Assembly (NCBI RefSeq): GCF_001194135.2
Contig: NC_068987.1
Span: 44,772,945-44,827,808, forward strand
Direction: 5' to 3'
Source: Octopus bimaculoides
Taxonomy: Eukaryota
Length of the DNA stretch: 54,864 bases
A program made the position numbers and the translations under genes. Shown here piece after piece: positions 29,093 to 54,864 of this stretch (positions are counted from its first letter, which is position 1; each line of letters begins with the position of its first letter). The notes beneath the pieces are model-generated. The model made no database searches, had not been told where the DNA came from, and saw only the letters and a list, made by a program, of their open reading frames with translations.

Positions 29093-29220
29093 CTTATCTA
29101 CTGTCTGTTCTTCTTTGAAAAGGACAAAGCCAAAACCTCTGGATCTCTTTGTAACAGGGTCTGTTTTTAGATTACAATGTTCTACTTCCCCAAATTTAGA
29201 GAAATATTCTCTTAAGTCCT
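29093..29220 (-). CDS. sqd: hnRNP D/AB-like coding exon 3, RRM1 with RNP1 RGFGFVLF
   Basis: ctcttcag acceptor, gtaaga donor, 128 nt, phase 1-0; [42 protein letters not shown]. Confidence 0.97.
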
Positions 29221-30135
29221 CTGAAGAGAGACAGGGGTGAAAAAGAAAAATCACTTTATAAAGTACTGTTTTTGAACTCTGAAAGAGGAATTATAATCTT
29301 AGTTTAAATTATCCAAGTTGAAACTTAACTGGAATTTAAATTGGAAAAACTCAAAATTGATTAGAGAGAAGATATATTTCTAGATATCACTTAAAAACCA
29401 GCATTTAATTTATCCTTGGTGCAAATGATTTTTTATTAGGTATGAAAAGCCAAAGTCTTAGTCTGTAGCATGTACTGAAACTGAGAATTATACAATTGGA
29501 AAAGGAGGTAAATCAAAATGGGAGAAATCCCAGAGTGAAATCACATACCACGTCCATAGACCAAGTCTAGTATTTCCTACTGGATAGCTGAAAAAGATCA
29601 ACTTTCGCATGAAACATTTTCACACAGCAATTGAATGTTTCCACTAATGAAATCAAGTCATTAAAGAGCTTAAAATTACCTGCTAAATAAATTTTTTAAA
29701 ATTTAAACCGCCGTGTTTTAAGCATACAAATAATATACATATTAATTTAAAAGATAGTTTATTATACAAAAATATTTAATTTACTAGCTACCAAAAACAA
29801 AAAACAAAAATCCCTTGGCATTTAAACATCTAAATACACCGGCGTAATGTTAAGTAATTATTACTTTTAATGAGTACAAAATAAAGCAATCACTTGCTAG
29901 TAATAAAAAGTAAAATTGAAAAAAACTGCTTTTATATTTTTATGTAGGAATGCACCAGTTATTGTAGAGAAAAACTTAAAAACAATCAACATTTTAGTCA
30001 CACCAAACAATTTTCTTTCTTTTTTTTATTTTTAGAGAAAAAAAGGAAAAATTCGCCAACTAAAAATCTGAGATTGCAGACAAAACAGATATGAGAAAGG
30101 AAATAAGGCAGTTAGTTTAGATCTAGTAAGAAAAC

Positions 30136-30201
<66 letters not shown>

Positions 30202-31183
30202 AGTGGGGTGAACTGAAATATATACTTAGAAGAGAAAGAATCAAGTAGATGTGCACTGAGAGTGCAACAGACAGCGCCATAAAAGGAGGCAAGATCACTG
30301 GTGCAAAAAGTAGCCAACTGTTCAGAGCGTATAGCAGCAGAACTATTGACACGAAAGATGGCAACAATGACGATTCTTGTCATCATCTTGCAGCTCCTCT
30401 CTCCTGATTCTGACGATGAGGAAGTAAGAGAGAGATGGAGAATTCGAAATCTAATAAAAATGCTGAAAGAGTTATCACCGAAAGTAACCAGACATTAATG
30501 TTAATCCAAGAGAAGAAAGCTTTATTTGTCTAATTTGTCTTCGTAAACAGAATTTGTAAAACAGAAAAAAACCTCGTTTGATTTTTTTTTTAACATTTAA
30601 TTTGAACTGAATTTGGAGAGTTAGATGCTCGGTGTCAATGACCGAATATAGAAAATTGAAAGTATAGGAGTATTCCTGTGTTGAAAAGTATAAATTGAAC
30701 TGTCTCAAGCCGTTTCTCAGAGTTTCTCTGCACACGAGTATTAACGCTTCTCCTGTCAGCTATATATATGGTGGGGACGCCCGGAAAAGCCTTAATGCAC
30801 GTATGTGGAAACTCAAGATACGGCATAAACGGCTTGAGACATTCTACATGTAGTGAATACCTCACTTTATATACATATATATATATATAAATATAATTTA
30901 TATTTATAAATTTGGCATACCAGTATTTGGATAAACATCGATAATACAACAGTCCACAGCAAACGAAGAATTATTAATTTTCTTAGAATTCTCTTTTCTT
31001 TATTTATTTATTAAGTATATTCGACGAAATTTTTTAAAAATTTAATGAGTGAAATAATAATGAGATGAATGGTTTTCTTATATGAGAAAAGAGAAAGATG
31101 GGAAGAACAATGAATGAGGGTTCAACGGTTGACCGTGGTGTGTGTATATATGTACGTATATATGCATATACTCACTTTATATG

Positions 31184-31219
<36 letters not shown>

Positions 31220-32744
31220 GTGTGTGTGCGTGCGTGTAAATAATGTATGAGGAGAAAGAATTACGATGGGTGTCACGGAAATAGAACAACTCGAAGTGAA
31301 ACTGGTATTTGTGGGCAAGAGGAGTATAATACATCATAGATTAGAGAGATGTAGTGAGCCAGAATGAGACACGTAGTTCGAACAAGACTGGGGAAAGGAA
31401 TAGTTTGTTTCCCGGTTTTAAAATGTTTAGCTGGATATTTTTAATTGAACATGAACGATGAGGTGATGAGGATATGAAAGACGATACAGAAATATTGAAA
31501 GGGGAAAAAACAGGAAAAATGACAAAAGAAAAAATAATTCGAGATGAGGAAGGAGTGAAGGATTATAATTAGTCCAGCGTCACAAGCACCGGCTGTTTAT
31601 CGTTAGTTATTACAATTTAAACATTTTCGCAGTAGATTACTATAACTAACTCCTCTACAATTATAATTTATTTTTATAACTACACAGTCTAAAAATTAAT
31701 ATACATAACAATCGGCTTTTCTTTGTTATCAACGACGATAACCGGTTATTTTAGAGAAGGAAGTCACTAGTTTTAATGGTGAATCAAGCCAGAGAAACAA
31801 AATATTTAAGTCATTTAATCTGCGACTGATTTCTAGCTGTCTTAATCCACACACGGAATTAAAGCATTACTGGAGTTATCATTAACTAATTTGTTTATTA
31901 ACGACACATCATCAATAAATGCAAGTAAATGCCAAACTATAACGGATCAATAAGAATATCATGTGTATAAGTGATTTAGGCACGGCGACAATTATGCAGG
32001 AGAGGGTTGCAATCGAGATTACAGCTAATTATTTGGGTAATGGGGAGATAAAAAGTTAAGGCTGAATAATTAAATGGCAAAGCCGATTAAAAATTGTTGT
32101 GACTGACTGCAACTGCTCTCCTTTTAAAGGGATACTCCTGCTGCTGTCATCATCTAAAAAAAAACCATCGCCATAACTAAGTACACTTTATCATTTCAAA
32201 CAGATTTGGATACACACACACACATAATCAACCAGAGATGCACTACCACAGGTAACACACAACTTCGGACTGCATACACAGAATGTCTACTCATTCTATT
32301 GTTTATTCAATATACACGCTCCTACAGACATATACAGTCGTTAAATCAACAACGGCCTAGATATATACACTCCTCTGTTTGTAGCCGTCACAGAGCTGGA
32401 GTGATCGACTGATGGTGGTGAAACTGCAAAAGTGCATTAATGGTAACATTAAGAATAATAAGCAGTAATGAGAGAACAAAATTAGTCCCATGGTGTAAAA
32501 ATGGAGAAGAAAGAAAGGCTGACGACTGTGAGGGGGGGGAGCAAGATTGGCGGTGGTGATCTTAGAAGGTAAACCCGCGAAGAGAGAGAGAGAGAGAGAG
32601 AGGGAGGACTAGAACCTGAGTAATATGTGTACTGCTGATGCTATATGGAGGACTGCTTGAGAATTTATGTGAGACATCACGTTCTGCATTGCTGTCAGAG
32701 TCAGCGACTACATTACTCTGTAAATAATTGTATATCGGTTGCGC

Positions 32745-32791
<47 letters not shown>

Positions 32792-33199
32792 TGTGTGCGC
32801 GCGCGTGCGCGCAAATATACACACACGCACATAAATGTCAAGAGATTATATATTTATGCAGGAACATTTTTAATAGAGGTGTAAGCTTGAGAGCATGTAT
32901 AATTAATTACTTAGGTACATACATCCATGAACGATCATATCTAACAACCAGTGCCCGACGGGGAAGGGGTCTTAGCAGGTGCACAGTTTCAGACACGCTG
33001 GTGGTAAGTTCTTTCACAGATACGACACCGAAAATGTAGTGATGTACAAGAGATCATGGATCACAGTCAACATGAAACCATTCGCTAATTTAATCCTCAT
33101 AATTTCCAAAGAAATTTTAAACAACGTTTTCATTATTCTACACATTCACACGGTATCAGACAAACAACCCCTTTCGTAGAGGAGGAAGACACCGAGATC

Positions 33200-33880: not shown

Positions 33881-33921
33881 TGGCAGTTGTCTCCCAACTT
33901 AATCCTCCAACAAACAGTTTT
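33881..33921 (-). CDS. sqd: hnRNP D/AB-like coding exon 2, KLFVGGLSWETTA (RNP2 of RRM1)
   Basis: ttttacag acceptor, gtaagt donor, 41 nt, phase 2-1; KLFVGGLSWETT is the squid/hnRNP D signature. Confidence 0.97.
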
Positions 33922-38948: not shown

Positions 38949-39115
38949 CTACTATCTTCATCATCATTGCCTTTACTTTCCTCTCCATCAACTGTCTCCA
39001 TTGCCGCCGACTCCTCAAAAGTAGTGACGGCTTTCTCCACATTTTCGTGGCCATCAATGTTGTTAGCTCCATTTTCTCCGTCCATCTCCACAGTGTCAGT
39101 CTGGAATTCTGCCAT
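38949..39115 (-). CDS. sqd: hnRNP D/AB-family (squid/hrp40/AUF1-like) coding exon 1, acidic N-terminus. Full CDS: complement join(38949-39115, 33881-33921, 29093-29220, 25208-25360, 24044-24175, 22742-22796, 20539-20721, 17737-17778, 16352-16428) = 978 nt, 325 aa
   Basis: ATG at 39115, MAEFQTDTVEMDGENG...GNDDEDSR; AG/gtgaga donor in phase 2 joins exon 2 to give DSRKLFVGG; all junctions are GT-AG and keep frame. Vertebrate HNRNPD/AB/DL are co-orthologues, so the invertebrate symbol is used. Confidence 0.9.
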
Positions 39116-42235: not shown

Positions 42236-42709
42236 TGTGGTCAAAGATTAGAAGAATCATGGGGGTGTCTATGTCTGCTCACAACTACATAGGCACCTAA
42301 AATAATTAATGAAAGTGTCATACATGTTACCAAACCATACTTGTTCACAGGTGATGGCTGCAGCTCTCTATTACAAAATTAGTTCTGCATATTAATACAC
42401 AATCATTAGTATGGATAGTCTAAAAATTATTATATTTTTAAAAATTCACAGTACATCTAGATACCCTCTGCAGCACAACATTTGAGATCTTCTACACTAC
42501 ATGGTTGCTTAGCCTGCTAGAAATAGCAGCCAAAGCTCATGTTAAGAAGTTTGCTTCCCAACCACATGGTTTTAAGTTCAGTACTCAATATTTACATGCT
42601 ACTGTGTATAGCTTTATGTGTGCTTTCAGATTCATTATTCCAAAAAAGAATTATTTCGCATTCTCTCTAAAGTTAATCAAATTTGTATGATGTTAACAAG
42701 TGTGTGTGT

Positions 42710-43905
42710 GTTACAGTAAGGGTCATAGCCCAACTAATTAGGAAGAGAGTTAGTCTAGATGAGATGCAGTTTGGTTTTGTATCTGGGAGAAGCACCACTA
42801 ATGCTATATTTCTGGTGAGGCAGCTGCAGAAGTACCTAGCCAAAAATAAACTTCTGCACTTGGCTTTTGTTGACATGAAGAAGGCCTTTGACAGAGTCCA
42901 CCACTCCCTTATCTGGTGGTCAATGTGGAAACTAGGGATAGATGAGAGGTTGGTGAGAGCTGTACAAGCCACATATAGGGATGCTGTCAGTAAGATGAGG
43001 GTTGGCAACAAGTATAATGATGAATTTAGGGTAAAGGTAGAGGTTCACCAAGGATCAGTCCTCAGCTCCCACTTCTTCATCAGAGTCCTCCAGGCAATAA
43101 CAGGAATTTAAGATGGGCTGCCCTTGGGAGCTCCTCTATGCTGATGACCTTGTTCTTATAATTGAATCTCTTCCAGAACTAGAGAAGAAATTTCAGGTGT
43201 AGAAGGAAGGTCTAGAATCAAAGGGCCTTAGAGTTGACCTACCAAAAACCAAAATCTTAGTAAGTAGGAAAGCAGACAAATCACAAATCCCTTTCAGGTA
43301 GATGGCCCTGCTCAATCTGTAGAAAAGGCATAGGTAGAAACTCCATAAGATGTACCCAGTGTAAGCTAGTACACATAAGGTGTACAGAAGAAGGTTAACG
43401 GGGAAAATAGGTTTTGTGTGTGGAAGGTGCACAGGTACAACAAACACTAAAATTGTACAGAAAATAGACTCCATCAAATGCCAGTGGGGAAAGCTGGAAG
43501 TAGTTGATAGCTTCCTTTATCTAGGTGGCCAAGTCAGTAGCAGAGGTGGCTGCTCTGAGAGCGTAGATACTAGAATAAGAATAGACTAGGCAAAGTTCAG
43601 AGAGCTCCTACCTCTGTTGTTAACAAAGGGCTCCTCCCTCAGAGTGAAAGGTAGACTGTATGATGCCTGTGTGGGAACAGCTATGTTACACGAAAGTGAA
43701 ACATGGGCTGTAACTGCTGAGGACATGCATAGGCTTGAAAGAGAGGAAGGCAGTATGCTTTGCTGGATGTGCAATGTTAGTGTTCATGTACAACAAAGTG
43801 TAAGCCTCTAGAGAGAAAAGCTGGGCATAAGAGGCATCAGTTGTGGTGTGCAAGAGAGATGACTGTACTGGTATAGTCATGTGATGCATATGGACAAAGA
43901 TGGCT
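42710..43905 (+). mobile_element. RTE-clade LINE reverse transcriptase pseudogene fragment
   Basis: DEMQFGF..GRSTTNAIF, AFVDMKKAFDRV, VHQGSVLS, LLYADD, KTK, FLYLG and SETW motifs across three frames, with stops and frameshifts. Confidence 0.93.
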
Positions 43906-52949: not shown

Positions 52950-53336
52950 GTCGTTGTTGTTGGCACTCCGTCGGTTATGATGACAATTGTTCCAGTTGAT
53001 CCGATCAACGGAGCAGCCTGCTCGTGAAATTAATGTGCAAGTGACTGAGCACTCCACAGAAATGTTTACCCTTAACGTAGTTCTTGGATGATTCAGCGTG
53101 ACACAGTGTGACAAGGCTGGCCCTTTGAAATACAGGTACAACAGAAACAGGAAGAAAGAGTGAGAGAAAGTTGTGGTGAAAGAGTATAGCAGGGTTCACC
53201 ACCACCCCCTGCCAGAGCCTTGTGGAGCTTTAGGTGTTTTTGCTCAATAAACACTCACAATGCCTGGTCTGGGAATCGAAACCGCGATCCTAAGACCACG
53301 AGTCTGCTGCCCTAACCACTGGGCTATTGCACCTCT
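52950..53336 (-). mobile_element. Well-preserved tRNA-derived SINE (family C)
   Basis: A-box tagcccagtgg, B-box ggtttcgattccc, body shared with 21375, (AAC)n tail. Confidence 0.85.
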
Positions 53337-53339
53337 ACT

Positions 53340-53486
53340 GTGCAAAGGTGGAGCAAGCCCCTAACTCTTCACCTCATTCTAAAACTCAGTTTAATGTCGA
53401 TGGTCCCAAATAGGGACCATATCAGATATTAAGCTGATAAGAACAGATACTACGCTTTGATCTTAGCCAAAAGGCTGAGAAGCGAT
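53340..53486 (-). pseudogene. U2: 3'-truncated U2 snRNA copy
   Basis: atcgcttctcagccttttggctaagatcaaagcgtagtatctgttcttatcagcttaatatctgata... matches the U2 5' end through stem III (ggggcttgctccacc); Sm site altered (gagttttag), substitutions near the branch-pairing region, stem IV absent. Confidence 0.92.
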
Positions 53487-54379: not shown

Positions 54380-54864
54380 ATGATAGACAGCTATCACACA
54401 GAAAATGCCACCTTCCAAATCCTGTTTTCTAAAATTTCTCTAGAATAAATGAATTACAAAATCAGATTCAGCATGAATCTGATGTGTGGGAGCATTCTAT
54501 TTTCTCTGCCAGTTCCCTTGTCGTTTGACAAGAATTTTCGTGCAAAAGTTGGTTTAATTGCTCTTCAGCAAACTCAACTGGACGGTCAGAACGAGGTGCA
54601 TCTTTGAGGCCAAAATTTCCATTTTTGAACTTGGCATACCAAGCGATTCTTTCAGCTATGGCACCCTCTCCATACACAGCACAAATGTTGCAAGCAGAAC
54701 CTTGATTAAAAGCAAAAAGAAGGAGGTGTTGAAAATGCTCATTTTTCTTAACTTGACATTCCATTTTAATGATCTGAAAATAAACAAAAATAAATTAAAA
54801 TTAACTAGAAAAAAAAAACAAAATAGATTCCAAAATTTTTCAAAAATAGAATTCTCGAAAAAAA
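54380..54864 (-). mobile_element. Mariner transposon remnant, N-terminal HTH of transposase (ORF 54468-54764)
   Basis: MECQVKKNEHFQHLLLFAFNQG...WYAKFKNGNFGLKDAPRSDRP...TTRELA is a mariner DNA-binding region; truncated before the catalytic domain. Confidence 0.9.

What the first reader, a model, noticed from the sequence alone, without database searches (positions are those of the whole stretch)
30697..30844. About 150-nt intronic hairpin whose wobble pairs favour the transcribed strand
Seen: nested inverted repeats 30701-30715/30827-30841 (15 bp perfect), 30720-30726/30808-30814 (7 bp), 30731-30736/30800-30805 (6 bp) and 30740-30753/30783-30796 (14 positions, one G-G mismatch), around a 29-nt loop. 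The two other imperfect positions are G-U pairs on the - strand (hnRNP sense) but C-A mismatches on the + strand. There is no second copy in the window. Established: coleoids have many lineage-specific miRNAs and abundant ADAR editing. Inference: an intronic miRNA/hairpin RNA, ADAR substrate or splicing-regulatory structure about 1.1 kb upstream of the candidate poison exon. A decayed MITE is the alternative.
Basis: partly seen in the sequence, partly recalled or inferred. Interest (0 to 1): 0.72.

Follow-up and report, generated by a model that had tools for sequence, protein, structure and literature searches.

The report
Ordinary intronic inverted repeat in octopus
A real, very stable 148-base hairpin lies deep in an intron of an Octopus bimaculoides hnRNP gene, but it changes about as fast as the surrounding intron and was found only in the genus Octopus, so it is most likely an ordinary decaying inverted repeat rather than a microRNA or regulatory RNA.

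Summary
The hairpin at 30697-30844 is real. It has 15-bp perfect outer arms, about 50 base pairs, a 29-nt loop and an MFE near -58 kcal/mol (z about -7). The window is Octopus bimaculoides. The hairpin lies in intron 2 of the minus-strand hnRNP D-like-A gene, 3.0 kb from the donor and 1.5 kb upstream of exon 3.

The claim that wobble pairs favour the transcribed strand does not hold. Both strands fold equally well in O. bimaculoides, and the antisense strand folds better in O. vulgaris and O. sinensis.

The hairpin is present at the orthologous site in those two species. Its arms are 95% identical, against 92.5-93.7% for the intron as a whole. Sequence and covariance searches found it in neither Argonauta nor Acanthosepion, whereas a nearby intronic block is 82-95% conserved to Argonauta. 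There is no Rfam match, no second copy in any DNA I could reach, and no clear target-site duplication.

The best reading is a neutrally decaying palindrome, either a MITE/foldback relic or an in-situ inverted duplication. It may be edited incidentally by ADAR. A role as a miRNA or in splicing is not excluded, but nothing supports it. Genome-wide copy number and small-RNA or editing reads could not be checked with these tools.

The parts
30697..30844 (-). Whole imperfect palindrome or hairpin, about 49-52 bp of stem. The strand given is that of the host pre-mRNA. As DNA the element is strand-symmetric.
   Evidence: Orthologous copies are at L004:9930-10087 (O. sinensis) and L005:10082-10238 (O. 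vulgaris).
30701..30715 (.). Outer arm, left copy (TGTCTCAAGCCGTTT).
   Evidence: I3: 15 nt, 100% complementary to 30827-30841.
30827..30841 (.). Outer arm, right copy (AAACGGCTTGAGACA).
   Evidence: I3.
30754..30782 (.). Apical loop. It is 29 nt in O. bimaculoides and 39-40 nt in O. vulgaris and O. sinensis, because of poly-C and (TA)n length changes.
   Evidence: Loop identity is only 79%.
30816..30826 (.). One-sided internal loop of about 9-10 nt on the 5' side of the sense strand. It separates the outer 17-bp helix from the inner helices of about 33 bp.
   Evidence: Dot-bracket structures.
33881..33921 (-). Exon 2 of hnRNP D-like-A (..RKLFVGGLSWETTA). The donor of the host intron is just downstream in the sense direction.
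29093..29220 (-). Exon 3 ([16 protein letters not shown]...TVDK). The acceptor of the host intron is at 29221/29220.
29330..29690 (-). Context only, not part of the hairpin. This is the deeply conserved intronic block that includes the exon-like unit at about 29549-29587. It serves as the internal control for what a constrained element in this intron looks like.

Best explanation
The feature is a lineage-restricted imperfect DNA palindrome that arose in the ancestor of O. bimaculoides and O. vulgaris/O. sinensis and has been decaying at roughly the neutral rate since. It arose either by insertion of a small foldback or MITE-like element, or by an in-situ inverted duplication through a replication template switch.

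It lies deep in intron 2 of the hnRNP D-like-A (HNRNPABD) gene, so it is transcribed as part of the pre-mRNA. There it would fold into an imperfect duplex of about 50 bp, long enough to be edited incidentally by ADAR before the intron is degraded. It has no sequence-specific, selected function.

Shown: the structure, the intronic position, presence in three Octopus genomes, no detectable counterpart in the Argonauta and Acanthosepion orthologues, near-background substitution rate, and no strand preference.
Inferred: the mode of origin, the neutrality, and any editing.
For: - Host and position. The window is 100% identical to O. bimaculoides CM046607.1.
- Rate. Between O. bimaculoides and O. 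vulgaris the arms are 95.2% and 94.5% identical and the loop is 79%. The whole intron is 93.7%, or 92.5% outside its conserved blocks.
- Arm divergence. The two arms differ from each other by 13% in O. bimaculoides and 18.5% in O. vulgaris, plus about 10 indel columns. That is about twice the between-species neutral divergence. It is what a perfect palindrome born before the split and left to drift would show.
- Depth. No counterpart turned up in the orthologous gene of Argonauta hians or Acanthosepion pharaonis by blastn, nhmmer or covariance model. In the same intron, 29330-29690 is 82-95% identical to Argonauta, and 30245-30371 is 78% identical.
- Strand. There is no consistent preference in MFE.
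- Fold damage. The 7 arm substitutions harm the fold somewhat less than random transitions do, on both strands alike. The fractions of simulations at least as stable are 0.19 and 0.018 (sense) and 0.17 and 0.07 (antisense).
- Known families. There is no Rfam family match.
Against: - One fully compensatory pair (U-A to C-G) and three wobble-to-Watson-Crick changes keep pairing on the sense strand. Only one substitution breaks a pair. In one direction of the simulation only 1.8% of random transition sets preserve the fold as well. Mild selection for pairing therefore cannot be excluded.
- The inner part has a pri-miRNA-like geometry: about 12 bp of lower stem, about 23 bp of upper stem and a loop of at least 29 nt.
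- Neither origin was demonstrated. I found no other family copy and no target-site duplication, and no empty orthologous site that would reveal a duplication template.
- Only two effectively independent lineages carry the element, so the rate comparison has little power: 6 arm substitutions observed against about 9 expected.
Confidence: 0.6

Rival explanations
1. Origin sub-hypothesis: the hairpin is one old copy of a dispersed MITE or foldback transposon family of the Octopus genome, inserted into the intron before the O. bimaculoides / O. vulgaris split.
For: - The whole element is a 148-nt non-coding palindrome whose best-matched part is terminal, with 15-bp perfect ends.
- The window carries transposon relics. 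An RT fragment at 42677-43108 has a 79% copy in the unlinked locus L040, and there is an ORF I read as mariner-like at 54471-54794.
- Arm divergence fits an old insertion.
Against: - There is no second copy in the 54.9-kb window, in 31 kb of unlinked O. bimaculoides DNA (L040), or in the O. sinensis, O. vulgaris and Argonauta loci. At least ten other repeat segments of the window are recovered in L040, so the hairpin does not belong to a very abundant family.
- No target-site duplication is better than chance.
- A translated six-frame search of 5.8 billion predicted proteins found nothing.
- The 34 metagenome hits belong to an unrelated MITE that shares only the 12-mer I searched for.
Confidence: 0.3
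2. Origin sub-hypothesis: the hairpin was made in place by a replication template switch or inverted duplication of local intron sequence, and was never mobile.
For: - It is single-copy as far as I could see, and has no target-site duplication.
- Template switching is documented as creating long perfect stems, and as producing apparently compensatory changes in one step (PMC8794818, PMC5453318).
- The clustered change at alignment columns 5, 6 and 154 is of that kind.
- Fold preservation is alike on both strands, as expected for a DNA-level process.
Against: No outgroup with an alignable empty site was available, so no donor template can be shown. The Argonauta intron is too diverged around this position.
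Confidence: 0.3
3. The hairpin is the precursor of an Octopus-specific intronic miRNA, or a short hairpin RNA that yields siRNAs, processed from the hnRNP pre-mRNA.
For: - The hairpin is shared by two Octopus lineages said to have split about 50 Myr ago. Thirty-five miRNA families are reported as Octopus-restricted (PMC9699675).
- The inner module has about 12 bp of lower stem, about 23 bp of upper stem and a loop of at least 29 nt. A CGGC (CNNC-type) motif lies about 17 nt 3' of the putative Drosha cut (my reading).
- Five of six substitutions at paired positions keep sense-strand pairing, and one pair is compensatory.
Against: - There is no Rfam miRNA match. The best is mir-3149 at E=4, 16.8 bits against a gathering score of 100.
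- The arms are not more conserved than the intron.
- The stem is about 50 bp, with a further 17-bp helix below a merely one-sided bulge, rather than single-stranded basal flanks.
- Loop length changes by 10 nt through microsatellite slippage.
- The antisense strand folds as well or better.
- Twelve plausible seed-match 8-mers are absent from the target tables of PMC9699675. This is weak evidence, because those files are truncated and hold no full miRNA sequences.
- The prior is low: such hairpins should vastly outnumber the roughly 35 genus-specific miRNA families.
Confidence: 0.06
4. The hairpin is a selected RNA structure in the pre-mRNA. It could be an ADAR-recruiting duplex, or a structure that modulates splicing of the conserved cassette about 1.1 kb downstream or of exon 3.
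For: - A duplex of about 50 bp forms in the sense transcript.
- Coleoid introns are reported to be rich in editing at hairpins (PMC9699675).
- It lies near two deeply conserved intronic blocks.
- There is a mild excess of pair-preserving changes.
Against: - Sequence and structure searches do not find it in Argonauta, although the cassette it would regulate is 82-95% conserved there.
- It evolves at the background rate.
- It is a self-contained local hairpin that does not bracket or occlude any splice site. It lies 1.1 kb from the cassette and 1.5 kb from exon 3.
- Fold preservation is not specific to the sense strand.
Confidence: 0.08

Closest known systems
[quoted passage not shown]
   Same: It is short (148 nt), non-coding and palindromic, with its best-matching part at the termini. 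It lies in an intron and would form a hairpin when transcribed.
   Different: I found no target-site duplication and no second copy. Whole-genome copy number could not be measured. The termini match no superfamily signature that I could recognise from memory.
Hairpins created and maintained by replication template switching (Monttinen and Loytynoja 2022, PMC8794818; Loytynoja and Goldman 2017, PMC5453318)
   Same: It is a long near-perfect stem arising within a lineage. Clustered substitutions include an apparently compensatory pair, and both strands are equally foldable.
   Different: The donor and the ancestral empty state could not be reconstructed, so the mechanism is inferred rather than shown.
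Inverted-repeat dsRNA in introns as promiscuous ADAR substrates (for example paired Alu elements in human introns; hairpins in coleoid introns and 3'UTRs, PMC9699675)
   Same: It is an intramolecular duplex of about 50 bp in a pre-mRNA of a broadly expressed gene, in a clade with heavy A-to-I editing.
   Different: It is a single compact hairpin rather than two separate repeats. No editing data could be examined.
Transposon- or inverted-duplication-derived young miRNA genes (reviews: PMC4091103, PMC3086885)
   Same: It is a young, lineage-restricted hairpin of the kind from which new miRNAs are thought to emerge, and its inner module has roughly pri-miRNA dimensions.
   Different: There is no evidence of processing. 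The stem is longer than the canonical 35 bp or so, it lacks single-stranded basal flanks, and the arms are not constrained.

Membership tests
MITE / foldback transposon | Terminal inverted repeats | tested here: met
   The termini are 15 bp and perfect, and the whole element is an imperfect palindrome.
MITE / foldback transposon | Small size and no coding capacity | tested here: met
   The element is 148 nt. A six-frame translation has no similarity to any of 5.8 billion proteins.
MITE / foldback transposon | Target-site duplication flanking the ends | tested here: not met
   I scanned all boundaries within about 7 nt of the ends, for lengths 2-10. Only chance-level matches appeared, the best being 5/6 and 4/5 at offset boundaries. 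Decay of an old duplication cannot be excluded.
MITE / foldback transposon | Many dispersed copies in the genome | tested here: inconclusive
   No copy was found in the 54.9-kb window, in 31 kb of unlinked O. bimaculoides DNA, or in the other octopod loci. That excludes only very abundant families. The whole assembly cannot be searched with these tools.
Animal miRNA precursor (MirGeneDB-type criteria) | Hairpin with at least 16 paired nucleotides between putative 5p and 3p arms and a loop of at least 8 nt | tested here: met
   The inner 23-position duplex has 18 Watson-Crick and 2 G-U pairs, and the loop is 29-40 nt.
Animal miRNA precursor (MirGeneDB-type criteria) | Reads from both arms with homogeneous 5' ends and 2-nt 3' overhangs | not testable with these tools
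   No small-RNA read data are accessible. The supplements of PMC9699675 hold no full miRNA sequences.
Animal miRNA precursor (MirGeneDB-type criteria) | A stem of about 35 bp flanked by single-stranded basal segments | tested here: not met
   The stem has about 50 bp. Below the inner module there is only a one-sided bulge of 9-10 nt, followed by a further 17-bp helix.
Animal miRNA precursor (MirGeneDB-type criteria) | Mature arms conserved above the neutral background between species that share the miRNA | tested here: not met
   The arms are 95% identical against an intron background of 92.5-93.7%. That is 6 substitutions observed against about 9 expected.
Any Rfam 15 family | Score at or above the gathering threshold | tested here: not met
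   The only window hit is U2 snRNA, elsewhere in the window. In the hairpin the best hit is mir-3149, at 16.8 bits against a threshold of 100.
Conserved structured RNA | Covariation supporting the helices | tested here: inconclusive
   One of 49 pairs shows a compensatory change, three change on one side only, and one breaks. Only two effectively independent lineages are available. Simulations give 0.018-0.19 on the sense strand and 0.07-0.17 on the antisense strand.
Conserved structured RNA | Presence in more distant relatives that keep the host intron | tested here: not met
   No match was found in the Argonauta hians or Acanthosepion pharaonis orthologous loci, by sequence or by covariance model.
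ADAR substrate | Intramolecular duplex of tens of base pairs within a transcribed RNA | tested here: met
   The hairpin has 49-52 pairs and a longest perfect run of 15 bp. It lies inside an intron of a gene whose spliced mRNA is present in public transcript assemblies (P0001).
ADAR substrate | Clustered A-to-G RNA/DNA differences on the transcribed strand | not testable with these tools
   No read-level RNA data are accessible.

The most novel reading that the evidence does not exclude
The hairpin is a young, Octopus-genus-specific functional RNA: either an intronic miRNA or a dedicated ADAR-recruiting duplex. It is hosted in an hnRNP gene just upstream of that gene's deeply conserved cassette exon, and so would link small-RNA or editing output to hnRNP autoregulation.
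Probability: 0.06. Interest if true: 0.5.

Novelty: new member of a known kind. Interest (0 to 1): 0.12.

Why it matters
As it stands it matters little. Intronic inverted repeats are common raw material in large, repeat-rich genomes, and this one shows no sign of constraint.

It is useful as a worked control. In the same intron, truly constrained non-coding blocks stand out clearly: 100% identity between Octopus species and 82-95% to Argonauta. The hairpin does not stand out.

If small-RNA or editing data later showed processing, it would be a datable example, younger than the Octopus-Argonauta split, of how new regulatory hairpins are born in coleoids.

Tried and rejected
- Rfam at gathering and permissive thresholds gave nothing at the hairpin.
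- I searched a six-frame translation of the hairpin against 5.8 billion predicted proteins, hoping to catch ORFs called on other copies in public octopus assemblies. There were no hits, not even the locus itself, so that resource evidently holds no such non-coding ORFs and the negative result is weak.
- I made one metagenome scan for both 12-nt termini at the right spacing. It hit 34 contigs of a single assembly, JAAUYG01. They belong to an unrelated palindromic MITE that shares only the 12-mer I searched for: nhmmer E is 0.5-10 and there is no similarity to any octopod locus. For palindromic elements the pattern amounts to only 12 specified bases, so I rejected these hits as chance.
- I searched the supplements of Zolotarov et al. 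2022 (PMC9699675) for 12-13-mers of the arms and for 12 candidate seed-match 8-mers. There were no hits, but the files are truncated and contain no full miRNA sequences.
- I fetched extra octopus DNA through a reverse-transcriptase relic of the window. This added only about 31 kb of usable unlinked O. bimaculoides sequence plus 41 kb of uncertain origin. No copy was found.
- The scan for target-site duplications gave nothing convincing.
- A second strong fold in the same intron, at 32701-32850, is only a (GT)n/(GC)n microsatellite.
- Same-register energy on the two strands favours the sense strand. I discounted this because the register was derived from the sense strand.

Full report

Yes. Window 30697-30844 contains a nested inverted repeat. 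Its outer arms, 30701-30715 and 30827-30841, are 15 nt and 100% complementary.

Folded as RNA, the + strand gives -58.0 kcal/mol (z -6.55) and the - strand -58.6 kcal/mol (z -7.15). None of 200 dinucleotide shuffles reaches either value.

In a 150-nt sliding scan of the whole window on both strands (4182 windows, mean -26.2, sd 9.3), this locus is among the roughly ten most stable. Apart from a weaker fold at 53301-53450 that overlaps the U2 snRNA gene, it is the only one of mixed sequence. The other top-ranked folds I inspected are TA or GT/GC microsatellites, including the apparent hairpin at 32701-32850.

No second copy exists in the window by blastn with word size 7, by nhmmer, or by covariance model.

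**2. Where is it?**

The window is 100% identical over 22.5 kb to Octopus bimaculoides chromosome CM046607.1, assembly GCA_001194135.2.

The minus strand carries a two-RRM hnRNP gene. Its protein is 100% identical to public octopus sequences named heterogeneous nuclear ribonucleoprotein D-like-A, called HNRNPABD in Acanthosepion.

- Exon 1 runs from the ATG at 39115 to 38949.
- Exon 2 is 33921-33881.
- Exon 3 is 29220-29093.

The hairpin therefore lies in the 4.66-kb intron 2, which splits RRM1. It is about 3.0 kb from the donor and about 1.48 kb from the exon 3 acceptor.

**3. Strand bias**

The finding's title claim fails.

- The free MFE structures have 4 G-U pairs on the sense strand and 5 on the antisense strand, and differ by 0.6 kcal/mol.
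- If the sense-strand register is imposed, there are 5 G-U positions on the sense strand against one position (C-A on the sense strand) that would be G-U only on the antisense strand. In O. vulgaris the count is 4 against 2.
- Counting shared and lineage-specific events together gives about 6 to 2, a one-sided binomial of about 0.15 by my arithmetic. This is not significant.
- The gene body shows T over A on the sense strand (AT skew +0.05 to +0.2 on the + strand). That would nudge the ratio the same way without any selection.
- In O. sinensis and O. vulgaris the antisense strand folds better: -59.7 and -60.5 against -54.6 and -54.7.

**4. Comparative evidence**

I obtained the orthologous loci through the host protein:

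- L004, O. sinensis
- L005, O. vulgaris
- L001, Argonauta hians
- L002, Acanthosepion pharaonis

The hairpin is present at the orthologous position in O. sinensis (L004:9930-10087) and O. vulgaris (L005:10082-10238).

Between O. bimaculoides and O. vulgaris, identity is as follows:

| Region | Identity |
|---|---|
| Hairpin arms | 95.2% and 94.5% |
| Hairpin loop | 79% (with poly-C and TA length changes) |
| Intron 2 overall | 93.7% |
| Intron 2 outside its conserved blocks | 92.5% |

So the arms evolve at about the background rate: 6 substitutions where about 9 would be expected.

In the same intron two blocks are clearly constrained. Block 30251-30400 is 99% identical, and block 29351-29650 is 100% identical. 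The stretch 29330-29690 is 82-95% identical even to Argonauta, as conserved as coding exon 3.

The hairpin has no detectable counterpart in Argonauta or Acanthosepion by sensitive blastn, by nhmmer, or by a covariance model built on the three Octopus sequences. The only other covariance-model hits are microsatellites.

**5. Pairing constraint**

Of 49 consensus pairs, one shows a compensatory change (U-A to C-G). Three change on one side between wobble and Watson-Crick pairing. One pair present in O. bimaculoides (G-C) becomes A-C in O. vulgaris and O. sinensis.

I placed the same number (7) of random transitions in the arms and refolded. The real substitutions are gentler than average:

| Strand | O. 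bimaculoides to O. vulgaris | O. vulgaris to O. bimaculoides |
|---|---|---|
| Sense | 0.19 | 0.018 |
| Antisense | 0.17 | 0.07 |

The values are the fraction of simulations at least as stable as the observed sequence. This is a weak hint that pairing is preserved. It is not strand-specific, so it fits a DNA-level process or chance as well as it fits RNA-level selection. Replication template switching is one such process; it is documented to create stems and to yield compensatory-looking changes in one step (PMC8794818, PMC5453318).

The two arms differ from each other by 13% in O. bimaculoides and 18.5% in O. vulgaris, plus about 10 indel columns. That is about twice the between-species neutral divergence. 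It matches a perfect palindrome formed somewhat before the species split and left to drift. PMC9699675 puts that split at about 50 Myr.

**6. Is it a MITE?**

It has terminal inverted repeats, is small and is non-coding. But no target-site duplication beats chance, and I found no other copy.

The DNA I could search is limited:

- the 54.9-kb window
- 31 kb of unlinked O. bimaculoides sequence (L040)
- the O. sinensis, O. vulgaris and Argonauta loci
- 41 kb of uncertain origin

As a positive control, at least ten other segments of the window do have copies in L040. The hairpin therefore does not belong to one of the very abundant repeat families. Families of low or moderate copy number remain possible.

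A metagenome scan for both termini returned 34 contigs of one assembly, JAAUYG01. Alignment and a profile search show that these are an unrelated palindromic MITE sharing only the 12-mer I had specified. I treat this as a chance match.

**7. Is it a miRNA or other functional RNA?**

There is no Rfam match.

The inner part has roughly pri-miRNA dimensions: about 12 bp of lower stem, about 23 bp of upper stem, and a loop of at least 29 nt. However, it sits on top of a further 17-bp helix, with only a one-sided bulge where single-stranded flanks would be expected.

The supplements of the octopus miRNA paper hold no precursor sequences. Twelve plausible seed-match 8-mers are absent from its truncated target tables. 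This is weak negative evidence.

Small-RNA reads, MirGeneDB and editing calls could not be consulted.

A duplex of about 50 bp in a neural-expressed pre-mRNA of a coleoid is a plausible incidental ADAR substrate. PMC9699675 reports that most editing is in introns and 3'UTRs, at hairpins.

**8. Verdict**

This is a real but ordinary feature: a genus-restricted, neutrally decaying intronic palindrome. It is either a MITE/foldback relic or an in-situ inverted duplication, and which one is unresolved. It has no demonstrated function, and a selected role has low residual probability (about 0.06-0.08 each for miRNA and for a structural or editing role).

The genuinely constrained elements of this intron lie elsewhere, at 30251-30400 and 29330-29690.

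Noticed in passing
window 29330-29690 (- strand), core about 29549-29587: An intronic block is 100% identical between O. bimaculoides and O. vulgaris and 82-95% identical to Argonauta hians, as conserved as coding exon 3. It contains an exon-like unit: CTTTTTCAG, then 39 nt carrying TAG triplets, then GTATGT.
   Followed up: partly
window 30251-30400 (- strand): A second conserved intronic block is 99% identical to O. vulgaris. A 127-nt part of it (30245-30371) is 78% identical to Argonauta (L001:16013-16149). It starts only about 300 nt downstream (sense direction) of the hairpin, which is not conserved.
   Followed up: partly
window 53322-53486 (- strand): There is a full-length U2 spliceosomal snRNA gene (Rfam RF00004, 124.7 bits, E 6e-25). 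The stretch 52955-53338, which just overlaps its 3' end, has an 82% copy in an unlinked O. bimaculoides locus (L040:29341-29702), so the U2 gene may lie in or beside a dispersed repeat unit.
   Followed up: no
L006-L039 (contigs JAAUYG010...): A high-copy palindromic MITE of about 165 nt was hit by chance, on 34 different contigs of one public assembly. Its consensus is TAGCCGGAAAACCTGGCTCCTCAAGCCGTTTTACTAG...CTAGTAAAACGGCTTGAGGAGCCAGGTTTTCCGGCTA. In several copies the 6 nt outside the element are also reverse complements of each other, which I cannot explain. The organism was not identified.
   Followed up: partly
window 42677-43808 (+ strand) and 54471-54794 (- strand): These are transposon relics. 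The first is a frameshifted reverse-transcriptase (LINE-type, RVT_1) fragment with a 79% copy in L040. The second is an ORF whose sequence I read as a mariner-type transposase N-terminal domain; that reading was not checked against a profile library.
   Followed up: partly
window about 31225-31340 (- strand): An older UniProt gene model for O. bimaculoides (A0A0L8FTD7, P0006) begins inside intron 2 (MYYTPLAHKYQFHFELFYF...) and joins exon 3. It is either an alternative first exon upstream of the hairpin or a prediction artefact.
   Followed up: no
window 32754-32804: A (GT)n/(GC)n microsatellite expansion of about 50 nt is present in O. bimaculoides but not in O. vulgaris or O. sinensis. It produces a spurious, strongly strand-asymmetric 'hairpin': -57 kcal/mol on the + strand against -30 on the - strand.
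   Followed up: yes
window 1 to about 8640 (+ strand): The neighbouring gene is a very large one (3713 aa in the O. bimaculoides locus table). In the O. sinensis and O. vulgaris loci its product carries SMG1, PI3/PI4-kinase and FATC Pfam hits. It converges on the 3' end of the hnRNP gene.
   Followed up: no
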